Source: Macrostomum hystrix (lineage: Eukaryota > Animalia > Platyhelminthes). From it: DNA of 64,000 bases. The notes under the pieces were generated by a model. It saw nothing but the letters and a program-made list of their open reading frames with translations. It was not told the DNA's origin and did no database searches. Each line of letters opens with the position of its first letter. Position 1 is the stretch's first letter. Of this stretch, positions 52,301 through 64,000 are shown piece by piece. The translations under genes and the position numbers were made by a program. The stretch covers positions 2,666,001 through 2,730,000 of the forward strand of contig CATNEN010000032.1 of the NCBI GenBank assembly GCA_950097015.1, given 5' to 3'.

Positions 52301-55300
52301 AGCTGGTGGATCGGCTCAGCGTCCTGTGCGAGGAGCTCCGAGCGCCGCTGTTGGACAACGGAGGCGTCGGGCTTCGGCCGTGCCTTCCTGGTGGCAGTGA
52401 GGCCGGCCTTCTCACCTGGCTGCTGACGCGGCGGCCTGGCTTGTCCGCCGACGCACTCGCCGACTGCTTGCTGGCCGATGTTGGAACGAAGACGGCGCGT
52501 TTGACGGAGGAACTGCTGGAGGATGTCGGGTGCGTTTGCAGTCATGATTTTGGGAATTTAAGAAAACTATATTTTTGGGAGTTTTTGAATGATGGTTGGC
52601 TTATTTTGGGATTCAACAGATGGGATAAAAGTGACTAACCACTCCCTCGCAGAGGGGTTTTAGTCTTGTAGTTAGAGTGTCTGACTTACGTCTCGAAGGT
52701 CGGGGGTTCGATTCCCCTTTAGCTAGGCACTTAACTCTGTATTGCTTCAGTTCAGCCAGCTATTAAATTGGTATTGGGATTAGCTGGGGTAATAATAGTA
52801 ATAATAATGATTGCAGGAGGGCTGCGGGCAATGGCACATCTTTTGGTGACACTAGACCCGCAGCCAGCGAGGAGGCAATTCTGCCCATTCCGCTGACTCT
52901 TGGACACACGCACACAGATACTGTACGCAGGCATACGCTCACACAGGTGTGTACATCTGCCCTGACAGTGAACACTCTGACTGTGCCTTAGAGGTTGACC
53001 CTCAAGGGCGTAAATTGCACGACAAGCCCCAAGCCTTCTCTCCGCGGCTGCGCCCCAAATAAACGTGGCCTCGCCGCGGAATCGGTGACTAATTAGTCTT
53101 GAGTGTGGCGTCCCCCCACAGTCCATGGACTGAACAGCCGTACCCCCCTACTTAGCCTGATCCGCCAGCTGTCAGCGAGCCTGACTCGCCTGGACCTGCC
53201 CGCCCTGTGCCGCCGTCTGGACCAAAGCCGAGGCCTCCACCGCCTGTGCCACCTACTGCCAAGACTGCGTCGCAATGCCGAGCTGATGAAAAATTCTCGC
53301 CGAGCTGCCGACCTGGCCAACGCCTGGACTGATGTGTACTGCCTGCTGGCCGGCGCCATGGAACCGCAGGTCCTGGTTGAGCAGCCGCCAGGCCTGCACT
53401 GCTCAGCCCTGTCGCCTGAGAGAATCTCCGCCGACCTGCTCAAACTGACCAATCAGATCACAGCTGGGGGAAACATCGGCAATGCGCTGCTCACTGTCCT
53501 GCTGCTGGCTGCGCCTGCTGATACCCTCGCCAGCCTCATCGGCTGCTGCGTTGGACTGGCCGGTAGAAGGGCCTCGCCAGGACTCATGCAGGTGAGCTCG
53601 ATAAGCCTCCTAGTATTCATCATAGTAGGTATAGGTTGGTCCTCGGTATAGGCAGGTAGGTATCTTTAAGATCCCATCTACCTAATTCTCAGATCCTCAG
53701 GTTAATAGGTATCTGTAAGATCCCATCTACCTAATTCTCAGATCCTCAGGTTAATAGGTATCTTTAAGATCCCATCTACCTAATTCTCAGATCCTCAGGT
53801 TAATAGGTATCTGTAAGATCCCATCTACCTAATTCTCAGATCCTCAGGTTAATAGGTATCTTTAAGATCCCATCTACCTAATTCTCAGATCCTCAGGTTA
53901 ATAGGTATCTCTAAGAGCCCATCTACCTAATTCTCAGATCCTCAGGTTAATAGGTATCTCTAAGATCCCATCTACCTAATTCTCAGATCCTCAGGTTGGT
54001 AGGTAGCTCTAAGATCCCATCTACCTAATTCTCAGATCCTCAGGTAAGTAGACAGGGCTCCACAGGCCCTGAGTAGTACACCAGGTTCCTTCTGTAGTTC
54101 AGCTCCAGTGTTGCATCTCAAAATGGCTCATAATTATAAATTTCCCATCCTCATCGCAGACCATCATGTTGAATCCGTTGGTAACTGCGGTTCTATTGTC
54201 GGATCCGAATCTACTGGCTAAGGCTGCCACTACCGCACTGTCCAATAATATCGACCCGATGATTCAAGCCAGCGTGTTGCTGTCTCTGAACCGGATGTCT
54301 GCGCCGAAGACGCCACTGTTGAAGCAGCTCCTGTCTCCGACTGATGGAAATGCAGCGATGCGATTCAGCGCCGCCTTCTGGATTGAGCTCATGCGACTGA
54401 GTACAGCGGAGGACTCAACTGATCATGGATGGTGAGTAGACGGACTAGCATTCGATTCTGTTGCTATGGAAACAGTTTCATTGCAATAAGAAAAACAAAA
54501 AAGTACGCTTTTTGCTTTTTTCGCAACATATCGGCTAGTACTACTTACTAGCTACTGGCAGTTGGAAAACACGTCGGAATCCCTGAGCTCGATTCCAAGG
54601 CGTAAAATATACGCCATAGAGAGCCAACCTCCAAGGCACAGTAAAAGTGTACACTGCCAAGAAAGTGGACTCACTCACTCGCTCACAAGGTGGAGGGAAT
54701 AGACAGAATTGCCTTCTCGCTAGGAGAGGGGCTTGTTTCACAAAAAACATTCGGGCTAAACCATATTTTGCATTTTTCTACTTATAGTAGGATAAAACCG
54801 CAAAATATTTAACGCTACCGCAGTCTGCGTGGCCTCGATTCGTCCGACCTGGCAGCCGCGATTCTATTGCTATTCAGCAGCACAGCCTCATCAACTCAAC
54901 TCCAGCCAGCCATCCCCGACACGCCGGAGGTTGACTCGGCCATCTCCGGTCTCGCGTCGGCGTTGGCGGCATTGGACTCCTCGGCGGAGACGGCGTCCGG
55001 CATTGTTGAAGCTTTGCTGGACGCCTGCTCAAAGCGGTCCGGCTATCGACTGTCTGATCGTGTTCGATTTGTTACATTGTGTCGGCCCTTGTTAGCAGCT
55101 GCCCAGTCTGCCGCGATTTCGCTAGAATCATTCGTTGACATCGACTTGTGGTCTGAAAGATTTGTTGATGATCAGTTGACAATTTTGGGCGGCCTGATTA
55201 CAATTGGTTGCTATGGCGACGACGCCTGGCTGTCTGCTCTGTCTGATCGGCTGCCTGATCGCCTGAGTCAGCCAGCAACTGCTGCAGCTGGCCTGGTCTG

Positions 55301-58300
55301 CTTGAGTCTGGTGAGACCGTCTGCTCTTTGGGGAATACTCTATTGGTGGGTTAGGCTCTTTGAGGATTTTTCTTGAGAATTATAAGTTCTAGTGCATTTG
55401 AAAATTTGGGATTCGGCTCCTAGGGATTAGACTATTAGGGATTAGACTATTAGGGATTAGACTATTTGGGATTAGACTATTAGGGATTGGACTATAAGGA
55501 TTATATTATTAGTGATTGCGCTCTTAGGGATTAGACTATTTGGCATTAGACTATTAGGGATTGGGCTCTTAGGGATTAGACTATTTGGCATTAGACTATT
55601 AGGGATTGGGCTCCTAGGGATTAGACTATTAGGGATTAGACTATTAGGTATTAGACTATATTAGGTATTAGACTATTAGGATTAGACTATTAGGGATTAG
55701 ATTATTAGTGATTAGACTATTAGGGATTGGGCTCCTAGAGATTAGACTATTAGGTATTAGACTATTAGGTATTAGACTATTAGGATTAGACTATTAGGAT
55801 TAGACTATTAGGGATTAGATTATTAGTGATTAGACTATTAGGGATTGGGCTCCTAGAGATTAGACTATTAGGGATTAGATTATTAGTGATTAGACTATTA
55901 GGGATTGGGCTCCTAGAGATTAGACTATTAGGGATTGGGCTCCTAGAGATTAGACTATTAGGGATTGGGCTCCTAGGGATAAGCCTATTAGGGATTAGAC
56001 TATTAGGGATTGGGCTCCTAGGGATTAGACTATTAGGGATTAGACTATTAGGGATTAGACTATTAGGGATTAGACTATTAGGGATTAGACTATTAGGGAT
56101 TGGACTATAAGGATTATATTATTAGTGATTGCGCTCTTAGGGATTAGACTATTTGGCATTAGACTATTAGGGATTGGGCTCTTAGGGATTAGACTATTTG
56201 GCATTAGACTATTAGGGATTGGGCTCCTAGGGATTAGACTATTAGGGATTAGACTATTAGGTATTAGACTATATTAGGTATTAGACTATTAGGATTAGAC
56301 TATTAGGGATTAGATTATTAGTGATTAGACTATTAGGGATTGGGCTCCTAGAGATTAGACTATTAGGTATTAGACTATTAGGTATTAGACTATTAGGATT
56401 AGACTATTAGGATTAGACTATTAGGGATTAGATTATTAGTGATTAGACTATTAGGGATTGGGCTCCTAGAGATTAGACTATTAGGTATTAGACTATTAGG
56501 ATTAGATTATTAGTGATTAGACTATTAGGGATTGGGCTCCTAGAGATTAGACTATTAGGGATTAGATTATTAGTGATTAGACTATTAGGGATTGGGCTCC
56601 TAGAGATTAGACTATTAGGGATTGGGCTCCTAGAGATTAGACTATTAGGGATTGGGCTCCTAGGGATAAGCCTATTAGGGATTAGACTATTAGGGATTGG
56701 GCTCCTAGGGATTAGACTATTAGGGATTAGACTATTAGGGATTGGGCTCCTAGGGATTAGACTATTAGGGATTGGGCTCCTAGAGATTAGACTATTAGGG
56801 ATAAGACTATTAGGGATTGGGCTCCTAGGGATAAGCCTATTAGGGATTAGACTATTAGGGATTGGGCTCCTAGGGATTAGACTATTAGGGATTAGACTAT
56901 TAGGGATTGGGCTCCTAGGGATTAGACTATTAGGGATTGGGCTCCTAGGGATTAGACTATTAGGGATAAGACTATTAGAGATTAGACTATTAGGGATTAG
57001 ATTATTAGTGATTAGGGCTCCTAGGGATTAGACTCTTGGGGATTATACTATAAGGGACTCGATTCTTATGGATTGGGCTATATCTGGGGTTATTTTCTTC
57101 GGGATTATATTTTTGGGAATTATGTATTCTACTTTTAAAGATATGGCTGCTTCGGTATTTGTCTAGTTGGGGACTCTTAGTCTCTTAGCTTATTTATAGG
57201 GATTTCCCGTGGAATCGAACTCGGGGAACTTGGTGCGAGAGGCAAACGCGTGACTTTACTGCCACATCAGAAAGTACTGTGGTGCCTCTCGCACCACGGT
57301 CCCTAAGTTCGATTCCACGGCTTGGAATTTACGCCCTTGAGCGCCAACCTCCAAGACACAGTGAAATGTACACTGCCTGACGATGAGAAAGTCAGGGCAG
57401 ATGTACACACCTGTGTGAGCGTATGCCTGCGTACAGTATCTGTGTGCGTGTGTGCTCAGGAGTCATCGAAATGGGCAGAATTGCCTCCTCGCTGGCTGCG
57501 GGTCTGGTGTCACCAAATGATGTGCCATTGCCCGCAGCCCTCCTGCAATTATTATTATTACTATTATTAACCTCAACTGCTTCACTTGCAGCTGGATCAG
57601 CAAAATTGTGGCTCGCATCGCTGGAGACGCTGCCTGCGGACTCTGGAGCTGCTCTGCCGCCGCAACTGGCTTAACGGTTGGCCGGCAGTTTTTGCGCTAG
57701 CAGGCACTGCAGCTGGCAACGACTGGATCGGCCACTGCGAAACAGCCCAGGCTGCTCGCCTGCAGGCTCTGGGCCTGGCGCTGCTGCATGCCAGGTGTCG
57801 GCTTCGCCGGGCCTCTGACGGCTGTCGAACTGCCGATACTCTTATCGGCGCAGTCAGGGTGAGTGACGTCACTGGCTGGGTTGGTGGCTCTTCGGGCATT
57901 CCTCATTGGTGGGCACTGCGTACGTGTCTGTTCTCCTATTGTGCAGAGATATCCGGTTTCATAATTTTCTGAATGGAAAATAAGGTCTCCTATTCTCTTA
58001 TTGGTTGGCTAGAATCCAGCTTCCTACTCTATGATTAGCTGGCTAGAATCCAGCTTCCTACTCTCTGATTGGCTGGCTAGAATCCAGCTTCCTACTCTCT
58101 GATTGGCTGGCTAGAATCCAGCTTCCTACTCTATGATTGGCTGGCTAGAATCCAGCTTCCTACTCTATGATTGGCTGGCTAGAATCCAGCTTCCATTATT
58201 CTCTGATTGGTCAAGAAGGATCGGGCTAGCGCATAAACTATTAATCCTTCCCATCTCCTGTCTCCAGTCCCAGTGTCAGGTCTGGCTAGCCGAACCCGAA

Positions 58301-58543
58301 AGCTGCTCCGCCGCCCTCTGCCATCTTCTGTTGCCAATGGCAACCGTCCAAGCGTCCGACTTGTCGTCAAGCCTGGCACTGCTGGTGGCCGAGACTCTGG
58401 CCCGCCTGGCGACCACCATCGGCTCGCCTGATTGTCGTGAATCCAGCACCTTCGAGAACCTGACTGCCCGCCTGCGAAGCTCTAGCTGGCTGAGCGATCC
58501 GGCTGTGCGGCGGGCTGCTTCAGGACTGCTGAAGTCTGGCTGA
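46370..58543 (+). CDS. Unrecognised Leu/Ala-rich, probably alpha-helical repeat protein, 9 exons, ~980 aa
   Basis: Exons 46370-46492, 51251-51400 (alt donor 51445), 51561-52136, 52174-52529, 53156-53591, 54160-54431, 54824-55310, 57592-57858, 58268-58543; every junction is GT-AG and phase-matched (2943 nt). The link of exon 1 across the 4.8 kb intron is the least certain. No family motif recognised. Confidence 0.7.
46500..49530. repeat. Two related 21-bp minisatellites in tandem, ~3 kb
   Basis: (GAATCTGGGACTACAAATCCT)n to ~47340, then (GAATCCGTGGCTACTAATCCA)n; starts just after a perfect donor AAG|GTGAGT at 46493. Confidence 0.97.
49579..50373 (-). CDS. Secreted PAN/apple-like + C-type lectin domain protein, intronless, 264 aa
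   Basis: Signal peptide MRTDTLALLLRTLWLVSTFTLA; CSIRCAATANCQAF..C (PAN-like); CPPGY...WDAANQDC...LGG...W...QPDGG..QAC...DDFNC....FICE (CTLD with QPD motif). Confidence 0.9.
   Translation of the reverse strand: MRTDTLALLLRTLWLVSTFTLAQFCQSNSAVRFHKTTGADCVNSSFINNIRGLCTPLDCSIRCAATANCQAFRLLSSSSCECKLFLFDACSHRVQSEPNCTNQVTVYVRSLPGVPPGRLCPPGYQHTRYGTSYKLVTDRRLMWDAANQDCSSNPGLTKLSDTIEADEVNYLLLLCSQISKESSTLDFLLGGNQTAKFALKSDGWKWLTCNTSINKVVWDSSQGQPDGGFPRQACTMIHSSFKNGIDDFNCNSPVPFICECQSVF
50812..51170. repeat. 29-30-bp minisatellite before an acceptor
   Basis: AATCCAATCCTCATCTCCCCAGTGGGATA-like units. Confidence 0.9.
52655..53137 (+). mobile_element. SINE family B interrupted by an antisense family A SINE (52791-53085)
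   Basis: B box GGTTCGATTCCC and CORE-like GGCACTTAACTCTGTATTGCTTCAGTTCAGCCAGCTATTAAATTGGTA; family A copy inserted tail first; family B resumes with GAGTGTGGCG...CAGTCCATGGACTGAA. Confidence 0.75.
53655..54045. repeat. 49-bp minisatellite, ~8 copies, intronic
   Basis: AAGATCCCATCTACCTAATTCTCAGATCCTCAGGTTAATAGGTATCTNT, period 49 (53668, 53717, 53766). Confidence 0.95.
54575..54730 (+). mobile_element. Degenerate SINE family A copy
   Basis: CCCTGAGCTCGATTCC...GCCAACCTCCAAGGCACAGT...GTGTACACTGCC...CAGAATTGCCTTCTCGCT. Confidence 0.65.
55410..57060. repeat. 15-bp minisatellite containing TTAGGG, with an internal higher-order duplication
   Basis: (GGGATTAGACTATTA)n; the variant block at 55488 recurs at 56101. 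Confidence 0.96.
57207..57570 (+). mobile_element. SINE family A copy (57275-57570) preceded by an inverted copy of its tRNA-like head
   Basis: Plus-strand body with B box AGTTCGATTCC and (ATT)n tail; 57207-57250 is a minus-strand head. Confidence 0.82.
58000..58210. repeat. 34-bp minisatellite, intronic
   Basis: (GGCTAGAATCCAGCTTCCTACTCTCTGATTGGCT)n, ~6 copies. Confidence 0.93.
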
Positions 58544-59068
58544 TCCGCTCTTGGAGCAGCCAGTGCAGCCGTGCGCTAGAACTGCAATGAACTAGCTTTC
58601 AAAATGCACATCTGAGACTTAGGGATCTGTTACTAGCAGATCACAGATTTATCCCATATCGATAAATTTCAGATTGGAATGGGATGCAGATCCCAAAGAT
58701 AGTCTAGTTTATCTCTTGGGGTGATTGCATTTTTCACAAATTACATTTATTGAGCATTAAAAAACTCAAGCAAAATCTCTGTTTCGCATGCTAGCAAACT
58801 CAAGTACTTGATGCTTCGCTTCATTCGCATTGTAGCTTTTTGCCAATAAACAATTTAATTAAATCTGCGTGTGTCCATTTCAATCGTTTGGTTTCATTTC
58901 GTTGATTTTTTTGGTTAACTGAAAAAAGCTAAAAACTGTCTGTCTGCTTTCGGTGTCTGTCTGTCTGTCTGTCTGTCTGTCAGTTCTGGGTGTCTGTCTG
59001 TCTGTTCTGGGTGTCTGTCTGTCTGTCTGTCTGTCAGGAAGTGACTTAGCTCCTGTCCTGGCTTCCAG

Positions 59069-61081
59069 GAGGCCCTGATCAGCGGCGCGGCGGCCGGTCT
59101 CTTGGTGGACCTGTCGCTCTACCCGCTTGACACCATTAAGACCCGGGCCCAGTCCGGCTCCGGCTTCTGGGCCGCCGGCGGCCTTCGCCGCCTCTTCCAG
59201 GGCGTCTCGGTCGTCTCCCTGCTTTCCATGCCCGGAGCCGCAGTCTTCTTTGCCACCTACGACGCTGGCAAAAGTCGCCAGCTGCCGCTGCCGCTAGCCG
59301 CCTGTCTGGGCGAGACTGCCGCCTGCCTGGTGCGAGTGCCCTGCGAGGTGGTGAAGCAGCGGGCCCAGACTGACGCAGCTCGGCGCGGGCCCTGGCGCAT
59401 CTTCACCGACTGCCTGCGCCAGGAAGGTCCGGGCGGCCTCTACCGAGGCTTTCGCAGCACCCTCCTCAGGGAACTGCCCTTCGCCAGCCTGCAGTTCCCG
59501 CTGTGGGAGGCGCTGAAGGTGCTGGCCGGCCCCGACTGGGTGGACAAGCCGGTCGCCTCGGCTGCTTGCGGCTTCGCGGCCGGCGGAACCGCCGCCTTCG
59601 TCACAACTCCGCTTGACGTGGCCAAGACTAGGATTATGCTGGCCGCTAGGTGAGTCCTGTATCCGTGCTATTCTATTCTCGCTTCTGTGCTCTCGTTACT
59701 CACTGCTATCCGTACTCATTAGTTTTTCCCTTTTGTTGCGTCTCCTAGGCTGGCTCCGGCCAGAGAATGGATCGGGTGGGTTAGGGGGCCGCCCGGAGAC
59801 ACCCAGGTCGTCTTGGCCCCAGGGGTAGCTAGGGACAAGGAGAGAGGCAGGGAGGGTCACAGACGTTTCTGCAGACCAGGGACGCAGGCGCGAAATTTTG
59901 CAGCCGAGGATTGTGAGGAGTGGTTTCCCCCCGGCACCCAGAAAATGAAGAAGGCGGTGACGACTCGGTCTTACCCGCACAAATGCGACAAGGCGTGTGG
60001 CCGGCTATATTTACTTGCTCGAACGTCAACGCACGCGCTGGGATACGCAAAGGAATCTTTGCGACTTAAGGGACTGTCGCGAATAAGAGGGGTCGCCGCC
60101 GACGGGTGAGTTTTGTCGGGTGCCGTAATTTCGGCTCTGACTGGTGTTCGTCTCGGACAGGTTAACATTCCGGGGCCCGAGCGCCAGACGAGCAACGCCG
60201 CTCAGCCTGACCCGGACTGAAATACCCTGGGCCCAGCCAGGGGGGGGGGCGGCAGCCTAAGCCGCGGCTAACGCGACACTAAATAACCCTGCCGCAGAAT
60301 GCACGCTCAAAAAGAGGGTGGGGTTAAGGCTCCAGGCCTCCCCCAGAATACACGCACAAAAGGGGGGTGGGGTTAAGGCTCCAGGCCTCCCCCAACGCAA
60401 CACCCGCCCAGCCAGGTTGGCTCAGGGGGTGTGTGGGCTCGCTCTGACAAACCGGCTAGCCCCACCCCGCCTCCCCCGGCCCACGCACAAACCACCAGCC
60501 CTCGCACTGGCGGTCCAACACTTTATTTGCATCATTTCATAGATTTCTCCACCTTCGACTTTTCTTCTCTTTCCGACTCTTTTTTCTCCCATTCTACTTT
60601 ATCCTATGTAGATTTCTCCCATACCGATTTCTCCTATTCCAATTTTCTCCCATTCTACTTTCTTTCATACCTATATTACCTATCCAAATTTCTCTAAAAA
60701 CCAAAATTTTTGTTCCTTTTTTCGATTTCCGTGTCCCAAGTTCTTCTTTGCTCGCCGATAAAAGACTTCCCTACCATTTTCTCCCTTAACCAGCTCTCTC
60801 ATTATTCCGTATCCCTGTCATACCTTGATTCTGAAGCAATCTTTCCTACCGATTCTAATCCGACATTCGCGCCTCCGCACCCCAGCAGGGACCGCCTGGC
60901 ATCGGGCAGCGTGCTCTCGGCCCTGTCCACGGTGTTCGCCGAGCGCGGCATGTCGGGCCTATTCGCCGGAGCGGCGCCGAGAACCGCCATGATTGCCATC
61001 GGAGGGGCCGTGTTCCTGGGAGTCTACGACACCGTGCGCCTCGGCCTGGACAGGCTCAGCTGGCTGGGCAGATCTTCCTGA
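59069..61081 (+). CDS. SLC25A26: Mitochondrial S-adenosylmethionine carrier, 2 exons, no genomic start codon
   Basis: Exons 59069-59649 and 60886-61081 (phase 2; NAGNAG alternative at 60889). ALISGAAAG..VDLSLYPLDTIKTR, RVPCEVVKQRAQ, TTPLDVAKTRIML, GLFAGAAPR...IAIGGAVFLGVYD match PET8/SAMC. Confidence 0.92.
59734..60520. mobile_element. Solo LTR (787 bp) in the SLC25A26 intron
   Basis: Termini TGTTG...CAACA; 4-bp TSD CTTT at 59730-59733 and 60521-60524; GC-rich island in a pyrimidine-rich intron; internal ~48-bp direct duplication. Confidence 0.8.
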
Positions 61082-61169
61082 TCCTCTGGGAGAATTTCCT
61101 GTGACTGACTTGCCTTCATCCTCGCGCGAGTCTTCCCTGATCGACCTGTCCCTGACTTCCCTGATTTAC

Positions 61170-61640
61170 TCCAACTCAATGACCTATTTTTCCAACTCAG
61201 TGACCTATTTGTCCAAAACCAATGACCTATTTATCCAAAACCAATGACCTATTTATTCAAAACCAATGACCTATTTATCCAAAACCAATGACCTATTTTT
61301 CCAAAACCAATGACCTATTTTTCCAACTCAGTGACCTATTTGTCCAAAACCAATGACCTATTTATTCAAAACCAATGACCTATTTATCCAAAACCAATGA
61401 CCTATTTATCCAAAACCAATGACCTATTTATCCAAAACCAATGACCTATTTATCCAAAACCAATGACCTATTTATCCAAAACCAATGACTATTTATCCAA
61501 AACCAATGACTATTTATCCAAAACCAATGACTATTTATCCAAAACCAATGACCTATTTATCCAAAACCAATGACCTATTTATCCAAAACCAATAACTATT
61601 TATCCAAAACCAATGACTATTTATCCAAAACCAATGACCG
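61170..61640. repeat. 22-bp minisatellite downstream of the SLC25A26 stop
   Basis: (CCAAAACCAATGACCTATTTAT)n. Confidence 0.95.
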
Positions 61641-62292
61641 ATATATCCAAACTATATATCCAATGTCCGATGTATCAAGCTCACAGACTTATTCAATTCA
61701 CCGATTTATCCGAACCCAATGACCGGTTAATATCACCGAATGACCGTTGTACGAGTGTATCTCATCCAATGACCGATTTTTCCCACCTAATGACCGATTT
61801 ATCTAAACCCAATGATAAAATCGAGGACGAACATAAAAAAACGTATTTTATAACAAAACTATATAAGTATAGCAGCCATATGATAATAGTGAGTATTTTG
61901 TAAGAATTTTGCTAGCAATTAAGATAGTTCAATTATATTTTTTGAATGTTTTTGTTAATCTGTTTGATTTAAACAAAATTATCGTTAGTTCTGGGTGTGT
62001 TTTCGCTAATTCATCCTACTTAGAAGTCAACTCTGCTGGCAACCTGTTTCAGCAGCAGCAGATGCTATACTATTGTCATTGGCATTTTATCAATTGCGAT
62101 TTCTCTTTAATGTTGAAAAAGAAAATAAAAAGTAAAAAAATACTGATCACGCATTTCAGTTGAGGTAGGAATTTTCAATTAAATTAGCCGGTCTGTTTCT
62201 GAGCTCGTATTTTATATTTCGTCTGACATCTCTCGACGCGCGCTGAGGTCTACTTAGAGTAGAGACTAACGCAAAACATTATTGGCTTAGAC

Positions 62293-62924
62293 CAGGGGTC
62301 GGCAAACTTATTAGCTAGCGGGCCAAATAGAGAACATAAAAGACGACAGCGGGCCGCATTGACTGTAAAAATATGAGACAATGTAGAGATTAGACACAGG
62401 AGAGATGTGACACGGGAGAGATGAGACACAGGAGAGACGAGACACGGGAGAGATGAGACAGGGAAGAGATGAGACAGGGAAGAGACGAGACACTGAAGAG
62501 ATGAGACGGGAGAGATGAGACACGGGAGAGTTGAGACGCGGGAGAGATGAGACACGGGAGAGTTGAGACGCGGGAGAGATGAGACACGGGAGAGTTGAGA
62601 CGCGGGAGAGATGAGACACGGGAGAGTTGAGACGCGGGAGAGTTGAGACAGGGGAGAGATGAGACGCGGGAGAGTTGAGACAGGGGAGAGATGAGACGCG
62701 GGAGAGTTGAGACAGGGAAGAGACGAGACACTGAAGAGATGAGACGGGAGAGATGAGACACGGGAGAGTTGAGACGCGGGAGAGATGAGACGCGGGAGAG
62801 AAAGGACACAGGTGACAGGGGATAGACGAGACAGGATACTGTAGGTGTCGGAATGGGCAACGGGCCGGATTTGGGAGCTTCGAGGGCCGCATTTGGCCCG
62901 CGGGCCGGAGTTTGCCGACCCCTG
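62293..62924 (+). mobile_element. hAT-type MITE with internal minisatellite, copy 4 (632 bp)
   Basis: TIRs CAGGGGTCGGCAAACT / AGTTTGCCGACCCCTG; perfect 8-bp TSD GCTTAGAC. Confidence 0.93.
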
Positions 62925-63324
62925 GCTTAGACGAATTCAGTTTAGCAGAAGACACTCTGAGCGATGTTCAGAGTACAGCTAGATGTACATTCAGTCCTGA
63001 TAGCAGATAAGATATGGTCTCTATTAACCAACTCTATTAAAGAAGCCTGCGAGCAATGGCGATCATTTTCTGTCTCGCCGGTTAAGAAGCAAACAGTTAA
63101 TTTTACTGAATACAAAAATAGGGCCTAGTTTAATATAAAACTAATATAATTTTGTGACTTTTTTATTCTAAAAGCAGCTGTTAATATTTGTCACTAAATT
63201 ACTGTATAGAAACTGGTTGTATTACATATAAAATAGAAAGCTGTTGGTTTATACAAAATGTACTTTATAATCTATCAAATCTTAATTTGTCTGTCAAAGT
63301 GTGTTTAAGGGGCCCAATAAATAT

Positions 63325-63600: not shown

Positions 63601-63683
63601 AAGACGCGTTAACCGATCCGCCACTCACCCCCTGACAGCCTGACAGCTAATAACAGTTCTTAGAAACCTGCGTCTGTCCGCAG

Positions 63684-64000
63684 CAGCCGTCAGTGGGCCT
63701 GTACCACTTCAGTCGACGGCTGGAGCTGCGCCGCTGCATGCTCTGCGACTCGGTTGGCCACGTCTCCGACGTTGTGTCGCTCAGCCGACTGGAGCCGGCC
63801 GATTACGAGACCCTGTTAAACAGCGGCTGGCGACGCCGGGAGCGGACAGTGTACCGCCTGCGGCCTGACACCACCTGCTGTCCGCAGTTCCCGCTGCGCT
63901 ACGAAGCGGCCGCATTCCGCCCGAGTCGAAGCCAACGCCGCGCCCTGCAACGGCTGCAGGCCAGCCTGCTGACCGAGGGCAATCATCAAGCCGATACTCA
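63684..64000 (+). CDS. ATE1: Arginyl-tRNA--protein transferase-like, 5' part; runs off the window
   Basis: QPSVGLY...RCMLC...DYETLLNSGWRRRERTVYR..DTTCCPQFPLR....FRPSRSQRRALQRL resembles the ATE1 N-domain (RCGYC; [42 protein letters not shown]). Acceptor TGTCCGCAG at 63683. Confidence 0.82.

What the first reader, a model, noticed from the sequence alone, without database searches (positions are those of the whole stretch)
59042..59230. SLC25A26 has no start codon: the spliced leader AUG would supply it exactly in frame
Seen: in-frame TGA at 59042-59044, no ATG before the conserved first helix, and the first in-frame ATG (59228) would delete TM1 and the PxDxxK signature. The acceptor CTTCCAG (59068) is phase 0, so AUG + GAG GCC CTG gives MEALISGAAAG, close to yeast Pet8 (M...SLLSGAAAG), ~259 aa. 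Only 525 nt separate it from the upstream stop; the one phase-0 ATG exon candidate there (58811-58831) has a poor donor (GTAGCT). Established: flatworm SL exons end in AUG, which can act as the initiator. Inference: translation of this carrier depends on trans-splicing.
Basis: partly seen in the sequence, partly recalled or inferred. Interest (0 to 1): 0.75.

Follow-up and report, generated by a model that had tools for sequence, protein, structure and literature searches.

The report
Spliced leader supplies carrier's start codon
In the flatworm Macrostomum hystrix the gene for the mitochondrial S-adenosylmethionine carrier has no start codon of its own, and RNA data show that a trans-spliced leader ending in AUG is joined exactly in frame in front of it; this is a clean new example of a mechanism already known from schistosomes.

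Summary
Observation confirmed, interpretation supported, novelty low.

The window is the Macrostomum hystrix assembly: 220,453,370 bases in 42 contigs, matching PMC10468722.

The gene is a single-copy SLC25A26/SAMC carrier.
- Exon 1 is 59069-59649 and exon 2 is 60886-61081.
- An in-frame TGA lies at 59042. There is no ATG in any frame from 58814 to 59227.

Spliced RNA contigs from four runs in two studies all start to fit at 59068.
- One contig carries 25 extra 5' letters identical to the Macrostomum spliced leader (SL), ending ...TTGCAT. The G at 59068 completes the ATG.
- Canonical SL RNA genes (SL ending in ATG, then a GTAAG donor) sit in tandem arrays in this genome.
- The mRNA therefore reads ...AUG|GAG GCC CUG, giving MEALISGAAAG... 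and 259 aa.

The M. lignano orthologue has the same CCAG|GAGGCCCTG acceptor and no ATG, and is annotated "partial". The 53 codons before the first genomic ATG evolve as coding sequence.

SL-AUG initiation has been known in flatworms since Cheng et al. 2006, and the M. hystrix genome paper anticipates it. This scan holds 18 similar notes on other DNA of this genome, one of them confirmed. Translation from the SL AUG itself is inferred, not shown.

The parts
58268..58873 (+). Last exon of the upstream same-strand gene. It is a large protein with no Pfam domain (942 aa in M. lignano). Stop at 58541-58543, AATAAA at 58845-58850, and the RNA contig ends at 58873.
   Evidence: Joint 57858/58268 with GT..AG in X6 and X7, and contigs 58267-58703 and 58626-58873. 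The frame is open. No Pfam hit.
58874..59068 (+). Outron / intercistronic spacer of 195 nt. It holds a (CTGT)n microsatellite at about 58940-59035 and contains no ATG.
   Evidence: No RNA contig covers 58913-59038 in any of the four runs. ATG scan.
59042..59044 (+). In-frame TGA, 9 codons upstream of the acceptor.
59062..59068 (+). Trans-splice acceptor CTTCCAG. It matches the [T/C]TNCAG motif enriched at M. lignano SL acceptors.
   Evidence: All four spliced contigs begin to fit at 59068. The X1 contig has 25 loose letters there that equal the SL. Motif from PMC8629364.
59069..59649 (+). Exon 1 of SLC25A26/SAMC. It has 193 full codons plus AG, with no ATG before 59228. The first codon, GAG, follows the SL AUG.
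   Evidence: Pfam Mito_carr, 5e-35, 3 stretches. Best hits are SAMC at 50-56% identity. Contigs.
59228..59230 (+). First genomic in-frame ATG (residue 54). Starting here would remove helix 1 and the PLDTIKTR signature.
59650..60885 (+). GT..AG intron of 1236 nt, removed in all four runs.
   Evidence: Joint 59647/60884 (cut +2) in X5, X6, X7 and X1.
60886..61081 (+). Exon 2, holding the end of the third carrier repeat. Stop TGA at 61079-61081.
   Evidence: Pfam Mito_carr, 4.9e-07. Contigs. Stop.

Best explanation
This is the single-copy gene for the mitochondrial S-adenosylmethionine carrier (SLC25A26/SAMC) of Macrostomum hystrix. Its pre-mRNA has no initiator codon.

Proposed sequence of events:
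1. The pre-mRNA is most likely made as the downstream part of a polycistronic transcript with the upstream gene, whose poly(A) site lies only 195 nt away.
2. The spliceosome joins the roughly 35-nt spliced leader, which ends in AUG, to the acceptor at 59068/59069 and discards the outron.
3. The leader's 3'-terminal AUG then sits directly in frame before GAG GCC CUG. It is the first AUG on the mRNA, and the only one upstream of helix 1.
4. Scanning ribosomes start there and make a complete 259-aa, six-helix carrier beginning MEALISGAAAG.

Shown: the gene identity, the absence of any genomic ATG, trans-splicing at exactly this site, the reading frame, conservation of the arrangement in M. lignano, and coding-type constraint on the 53 codons before the first genomic ATG.

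Inferred: that initiation really occurs at the SL AUG, by analogy with Schistosoma (Cheng et al. 2006), and that transcription is operon-like.
For:
- SL RNA genes: the exact 35-nt SL occurs at least 23 times. It forms tandem arrays about 11.6 kb apart on C15, C17 and C42. These copies show an ATG|GTAAGA donor, three hairpins and an Sm-like AUAUUUUUAG site.
- RNA: X1 contig record 7 fits 59068-59410 with 0 mismatches, preceded by 25 letters that equal SL nt 10-34. X5, X6 and X7 contigs of 400, 958 and 960 nt start to fit at the same base with 20-22 extra letters. The latter two also span the 59649/60886 exon junction.
- No ATG in any frame from 58814 to 59227, and an in-frame TGA at 59042.
- Alignment A1: orthologues have 0-17 residues before the conserved L-x-S/A-G-x-x-A-G start of helix 1, so Met plus two residues is within the normal range.
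- The M. lignano orthologue P0001 is labelled 'partial' and starts EALLSGAAAG. Its locus has the acceptor CCAG|GAGGCCCTG, an in-frame TGA 17 codons upstream, and its first ATG at the same internal Met.
- Between the two species, the 53 pre-ATG codons show 14 synonymous-only and 7 replacement differences. Differences by codon position are 8/0/17. The 60 nt upstream of the acceptor are 25% identical.
- There is only one SAMC locus in the genome.
- Literature: flatworm SLs end in AUG and can supply the initiator. In S. mansoni it is in frame in 28% of trans-spliced mRNAs, and more than 40 cDNAs need it (PMC9851317 and PMC12582326, citing Cheng 2006). [quoted passage not shown]
Against: - There is no direct evidence of translation from the SL AUG: no N-terminal peptide and no initiation footprints.
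- The RNA evidence consists of Logan contigs, which drop rare isoforms and give no quantitative SL usage. The clipped letters were printed only for X1. For X5-X7 only their length (20-22 nt) and position are known.
- The context of the SL AUG has U at -3, which is weak by vertebrate rules, although +4 is G here.
- The operon reading rests only on the 195-nt spacing. In M. lignano the spacer is about 2.3 kb and mostly tandem repeat.
Confidence: 0.88

Rival explanations
1. The trans-spliced mRNA is translated from a near-cognate codon instead of the SL AUG, for example the in-frame CUG at 59075-59077 (codon 3). The SL AUG would be skipped by leaky scanning because of its weak -3 U context.
For: The SL AUG is present on every trans-spliced mRNA and must be bypassed on the roughly two thirds where it is out of frame (inference). 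The -3 position is U. A CTG is present at codon 3.
Against: An in-frame AUG 32 nt from the cap, with G at +4, lies upstream of any near-cognate codon. According to the papers that cite it, Cheng et al. 2006 reported that more than 40 S. mansoni cDNAs need the SL AUG to initiate in the correct frame. The resulting protein would differ by only 2-3 residues.
Confidence: 0.05
2. Translation starts at the first genomic AUG (59228), giving a carrier that lacks helix 1. The upstream in-frame sequence would be untranslated.
For: It is the only genomic in-frame ATG in the 5' half of the gene, and it is conserved in M. lignano.
Against: The 53 codons before it are under coding constraint (8/0/17 differences by codon position). 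They encode invariant carrier residues, including the first PxDxxK/R signature. The SL AUG precedes it in frame with no stop between. A five-helix carrier would not be a functional SLC25 fold (established knowledge).
Confidence: 0.03
3. A minor or stage-specific transcript uses an undetected cis-spliced 5' exon with its own ATG, or a fusion with the upstream gene, so the gene does not strictly depend on trans-splicing.
For: Logan contigs drop rare variants. Flatworm acceptors are often shared between cis- and trans-splicing (PMC12582326).
Against: No such joint appears in four runs. The 57858 donor joins 58268. No ATG lies in the 195-nt spacer. The only phase-0 ATG mini-exon (58811-58831) lies in the unspliced 3' UTR of the upstream gene and has a poor donor. 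The M. lignano annotation also starts at the acceptor.
Confidence: 0.04

Closest known systems
Schistosoma mansoni mRNAs that use the SL 3'-terminal AUG as initiator methionine (Cheng, Cohen, Ndegwa & Davis 2006, J Biol Chem 281:733; read only through citing papers PMC9851317 and PMC12582326)
   Same: A flatworm SL ending in AUG is joined in frame to an ORF that has no AUG of its own before conserved N-terminal sequence.
   Different: The species is a free-living macrostomorph, the SL sequence is different, and the gene is different. Here translation from the SL AUG is inferred. In the schistosome work, by the account of the papers that cite it, the SL AUG was shown to serve as initiator; I could not read the paper itself.
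Macrostomum lignano BOX15_Mlig018227g2 (P0001, 'hypothetical protein, partial')
   Same: This is the orthologue: 83% identity over exon 1, an identical acceptor position (CCAG|GAGGCCCTG), no ATG, an in-frame stop upstream, and the same downstream neighbour (ATE1).
   Different: The outron region is about 2.3 kb, with a long tandem array, instead of 195 nt. The acceptor does not match the [T/C]TNCAG motif. It is annotated only as a partial CDS, without comment on the SL AUG.
Animal SLC25A26 / SAMC (for example mammalian P0024; yeast Sam5/Pet8 from memory)
   Same: There are three Mito_carr repeats, PxD/ExxK/R signatures on helices 1, 3 and 5, and 50-56% identity to annotated SAMCs.
   Different: Those genes encode their own AUG, 0-17 residues before helix 1. 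Here the AUG is not in the gene.
Downstream genes of nematode/flatworm operons resolved by SL trans-splicing; slORFs (PMC9851317)
   Same: A short spacer separates the upstream poly(A) site from the trans-splice acceptor. The SL creates the ORF's start.
   Different: Nematode SLs carry no AUG. Operon membership here is inferred from spacing alone, using the criterion of under 1 kb from PMC8629364.

Membership tests
SL trans-spliced mRNA with SL-donated initiator AUG (flatworm type) | The genome encodes an SL RNA whose exon ends in AUG, followed by a GU donor and an Sm-type site. | tested here: met
   The exact 35-mer occurs at least 23 times. L001 and L005-L008 show ATG|GTAAGA, three hairpins (-32.6 kcal/mol) and AUAUUUUUAG. 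No Rfam family exists for it.
SL trans-spliced mRNA with SL-donated initiator AUG (flatworm type) | The SL sequence is found on the mature mRNA, joined at an AG acceptor. | tested here: met
   The X1 contig carries 25 nt of SL followed by 59068 onward. X5, X6 and X7 contigs start at the same base with 20-22 extra letters.
SL trans-spliced mRNA with SL-donated initiator AUG (flatworm type) | The SL AUG is in frame with the conserved ORF, and no other AUG lies upstream of conserved N-terminal sequence. | tested here: met
SL trans-spliced mRNA with SL-donated initiator AUG (flatworm type) | Translation actually initiates at the SL AUG. | not testable with these tools
   This needs an N-terminal peptide, initiation-site ribosome profiling or a reporter.
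SLC25A26 / mitochondrial S-adenosylmethionine carrier | Three tandem Mito_carr repeats with PxD/ExxK/R signatures. | tested here: met
   Pfam PF00153, 5e-35 (3 stretches, exon 1) and 4.9e-07 (exon 2). PLDTIKTR, VPCEVVKQR and TPLDVAKTR are seen.
SLC25A26 / mitochondrial S-adenosylmethionine carrier | Closest relatives are SAMC orthologues rather than other SLC25 subfamilies. | tested here: met
   The top 120 hits are annotated SAMC/SLC25A26 at 49-56% identity. The other carriers in this genome are at most 40% identical.
SLC25A26 / mitochondrial S-adenosylmethionine carrier | SAM/SAH exchange activity. | not testable with these tools
   This needs a transport assay or complementation of yeast sam5.
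Operon (polycistronic) downstream gene | Same-strand upstream gene less than 1 kb away, and a trans-spliced downstream gene (criterion of PMC8629364). | tested here: met
   The upstream contig ends at 58873 and the acceptor is at 59068, a gap of 195 nt.
Operon (polycistronic) downstream gene | A single precursor transcript spans both genes. | tested here: inconclusive
   No contig covers 58913-59038. That is expected for a short-lived outron, so it is not evidence either way.

The most novel reading that the evidence does not exclude
Dependence on the SL AUG may not be an oddity of one gene. It may be an ancient, locked-in state shared by whole syntenic blocks in Macrostomum.

- SAMC and its downstream neighbour ATE1 both lack a genomic ATG, at conserved acceptors, in both M. 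hystrix and M. lignano.
- This scan holds at least 18 similar notes on this genome.

If hundreds of conserved housekeeping genes have irreversibly handed their start codon to the leader, two things follow. Trans-splicing would be an obligatory, ratchet-like requirement for core metabolism, here mitochondrial SAM import. And a large share of Macrostomum protein models, those labelled 'partial' or truncated to an internal Met, would have wrong N-termini.
Probability: 0.55. Interest if true: 0.45.

Novelty: new member of a known kind. Interest (0 to 1): 0.25.

Why it matters
**Annotation.** The gene would be called partial, or wrongly started at Met54. That would give a five-helix non-carrier, unless the leader's AUG is added. 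The M. lignano orthologue is in fact deposited as 'partial'.

**Biology.** The only route for SAM into mitochondria in this worm depends on trans-splicing. Mitochondrial SAM is needed for mitochondrial RNA and protein methylation and for lipoate and ubiquinone synthesis; that statement is established knowledge about SAMC and was not tested here.

**Evolution.** The arrangement has been kept since the two Macrostomum species diverged; the third codon positions of the first 53 codons differ at 32% (17 of 53).

**Practical use.** It offers a compact natural cassette (acceptor plus ATG-less ORF) for testing SL-AUG initiation in the transgenic M. lignano system.

It does not open a new question, because the mechanism has been known since 2006.

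Tried and rejected
**Rejected readings**
- A cis-spliced ATG exon in the 525-nt gap. The phase-0 ATGs at 58604 and 58679 run straight into stops. The one at 58811 lies in the upstream gene's unspliced 3' UTR.
- Fusion of the upstream donor at 57858 to 59069. That donor joins 58268 instead.
- A second SAMC copy with its own ATG. None exists in the genome.
- An alternative SL acceptor at 59037 (tgtcag|GAAG). It would run into TAG after 3 codons, and no contig uses it.

**Led nowhere**
- Rfam has no model that recognises the SL RNA. Only a neighbouring U1 snRNA gene was found.
- Cheng et al. 2006 could not be read, so its content is cited through PMC9851317 and PMC12582326.
- Other flatworm SAMC orthologues (Schistosoma, Schmidtea, cestodes) did not reach the top 120 hits. 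Deeper conservation of the ATG-less acceptor was therefore not tested.

**Left out on purpose**
- The big representative search and structure prediction were not used, because the protein's family was not in doubt.
- SL + exon 1 + exon 2 were never joined into one sequence for a search or a fold.

**Limits**
- The ATE1 acceptor could therefore not be checked against RNA, and the clipped letters of X5-X7 were not printed.

Full report
**What the window is.** The genome search reports that the window is contig 32, 2,666,001-2,730,000, of a genome of 220,453,370 bases in 42 contigs. These are exactly the figures given for the Macrostomum hystrix assembly in Table 1 of PMC10468722. The organism is therefore a free-living macrostomorph flatworm.

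**The observation.**
- Translating 59042-59650 gives a stop (TGA at 59042), then LSSCPGFQ, then EALISGAAAGLLVDLSLYPLDTIKTR... The first Met appears only at 59228.
- A script found no ATG in any frame between 58814 and 59227. It also confirmed the in-frame stops and the three phase-0 ATGs further upstream (58604, 58679, 58811). All three are followed quickly by stops or, for 58811, by GTAGCT.
- Exon 1 (59069-59649) hits Pfam Mito_carr at 5e-35 in three stretches. Exon 2 hits it at 4.9e-07.
- The word search returns SAMC/SLC25A26 proteins from many animals at 49-56% identity.
- In alignment A1 the invariant helix-1 residues and the PLDTIKTR signature occupy residues 6-26, upstream of Met54. Other species have 0-17 residues before the conserved start of helix 1.

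**The leader exists in this genome.**
- The 35-nt M. lignano SL, taken from PMC8629364, occurs without mismatch at least 23 times in this genome. It forms arrays spaced about 11.6 kb apart on contigs 15, 17 and 42.
- Five of the eight fetched copies are canonical SL RNA genes. The SL exon ends in ATG and is followed by GTAAGA. The donor is paired in stem 1, there are two further hairpins, and an Sm-like AUAUUUUUAG lies between them.

**RNA evidence.** The look-up of sequencing runs gave eight runs from two studies. I laid four of them on 57401-61160.
- All four behave as RNA. The 1236-nt GT..AG intron (59650-60885) is removed in every run, and intronic and intergenic bins are empty or near empty.
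- In each run a contig starts to fit exactly at 59068 and carries extra 5' letters:

| Run | Record | Record length (nt) | Extra 5' letters |
|---|---|---|---|
| X1 | 7 | 368 | 25 |
| X5 | 13 | 400 | 20 |
| X6 | 22 | 958 | 20 |
| X7 | 29 | 960 | 22 |

- For X1 the loose letters were printed. They are ACTGCGAAGACTCAATTTATTGCAT, which is SL nt 10-34. The G at 59068 coincides with the SL's last G, so the true junction is SL...AUG|59069.
- No contig covers 58913-59038.
- The upstream gene's donor at 57858 is joined to 58268. Its transcript contig ends at 58873, 23 nt after the AATAAA at 58845-58850.
- The mature mRNA therefore reads ...UUGC AUG GAG GCC CUG AUC..., with the AUG in phase 0. With the leader Met, the protein has 1 + 258 codons, or 259 residues.

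**Comparative evidence.**
- The best hit, P0001, is M. lignano BOX15_Mlig018227g2, labelled 'partial'. It begins EALLSGAAAG.
- Its locus (L009) has the acceptor ...CGCGCCAG|GAGGCCCTG at the homologous base. An in-frame TGA lies 17 codons upstream, there is no intervening ATG, and the first ATG is at the same internal Met.
- Across the 53 codons between the acceptor and that Met, the two species differ at 25 of 159 nt, distributed 8/0/17 over codon positions. That makes 14 synonymous-only and 7 replacement codons.
- The 60 nt upstream of the acceptor are 25% identical. Coding constraint therefore starts exactly at the acceptor.
- M. hystrix has no second SAMC gene.

**Mechanism.**
- Shown: the gene has no initiator, the SL is spliced at 59069, and the SL AUG is in frame and is the first AUG on the mRNA.
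- Inferred: ribosomes initiate at the SL AUG. The basis is the S. mansoni report, where the SL AUG is in frame in 28% of trans-spliced mRNAs and is required by more than 40 cDNAs (Cheng et al. 2006, as summarised in PMC9851317; also PMC12582326).
- The 195-nt gap between the upstream poly(A) site and the acceptor meets the operon criterion (under 1 kb) of PMC8629364. The acceptor TTCCAG matches that paper's [T/C]TNCAG motif. Polycistronic transcription is therefore likely, but it is not shown.

**Rivals.** I consider three, each at about 5% or less.
- Near-cognate initiation just downstream of the SL AUG.
- Initiation at Met54.
- A rare cis-spliced isoform.

The reasons for these odds are given with each rival in the Rival explanations section.

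**Novelty.**
- The phenomenon is established for flatworms.
- The M. lignano orthologue is already deposited as a partial CDS starting at the acceptor.
- This scan holds 18 notes of the same type on other parts of this genome. One of them (CHMP6) was confirmed by another follow-up. I did not test those.
- This is therefore a well-documented new member of a known kind, not a new mechanism.

Noticed in passing
window 63651-63998; L009:6207-6533: The downstream neighbour, arginyl-tRNA-protein transferase ATE1 (Pfam ATE_N, 8.5e-16), also seems to lack a genomic start codon.

- M. hystrix: the acceptor is cag|cag at 63682-63686 and the exon starts at 63687 (PSVGLYHF...). An in-frame TAA lies at 63651 with no ATG between. 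The first ATG is codon 18, inside the CxxC motif, and it is not conserved.
- M. lignano: the annotated CDS starts at the acceptor (ttttcagcag|GCA) with no ATG. An in-frame TGA lies 5 codons upstream, and the first ATG is codon 70.

This looks like a second SL-AUG-dependent gene in the same syntenic block. It was not checked with reads.
   Followed up: partly
L002, L003, L004 (G000:C3:9792961, C7:8561392, C7:9274918): Here the exact 35-nt SL is followed not by the SL RNA intron but by unrelated sequence. These copies share 9-10 nt upstream of the 35-mer, GCC(G/A)TAAAGA, with the true SL RNA genes. They may be retroposed copies of trans-spliced mRNAs. If so, the mature leader may be about 45 nt rather than 35 nt.
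   Followed up: no
G000:C39:12,667,884-12,685,526: A tandem array with a period of about 927 nt and at least 20 copies. It carries an SL-like variant (...GACTCTCTTTTTTGCATG, 3 mismatches). Separately, a dispersed family with the variant ...ACGGCGAAGGCTCAATTTATTGCATA occurs on many contigs. These may be SL-derived repeats.
   Followed up: no
L005:1838-2000 (-): A full-length U1 snRNA gene (Rfam RF00003, 151.7 bits) lies about 300 nt upstream of the SL RNA gene, on the same strand, within the ~11.6-kb tandem unit. In M. hystrix the SL RNA and U1 genes are therefore co-amplified.
   Followed up: no
window 57401-57570: A repeat covered by hundreds of RNA contigs at 85-99% identity, with summed word depth in the thousands. 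It is a highly expressed dispersed element that lies in an intron or exon edge of the upstream gene. A related copy seems to lie at 52763-52975 on the other strand, because the ORF translations share ADVHTCVSVCLRTVSVCVC.
   Followed up: no
window 58940-59035; L009:3300-3830: In both species the outron of SAMC carries CTGTCTG-type tandem repeats. M. hystrix has (CTGT)n just upstream of the acceptor. M. lignano has a ~28-nt unit array of about 530 nt that ends about 170 nt upstream. This may be chance, or a pyrimidine/GU-rich element that favours trans-splicing.
   Followed up: no
window 62271-62946: A MITE-like or foldback element. It has 38-nt terminal inverted repeats (76% complementary) that flank an internal tandem array of GAGAGATGAGACACGG-type units. 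It lies between SAMC and ATE1.
   Followed up: no
window 58000-58200 and 61160-61640: Two tandem arrays. One has a ~35-nt unit (GATTGGCTGGCTAGAATCCAGCTTCCTACTCTCT) and lies in the last intron of the upstream gene. The other has a ~22-nt unit (CCAAAACCAATGACCTATTTAT) and lies just after the SAMC stop, probably within its 3' UTR, since the contigs run at least 81 nt past 61160.
   Followed up: no
window 60884-60888: A NAGNAG acceptor (cag|cag) at the start of SAMC exon 2. All contigs use the first AG. Using the second would delete one Ser.
   Followed up: partly
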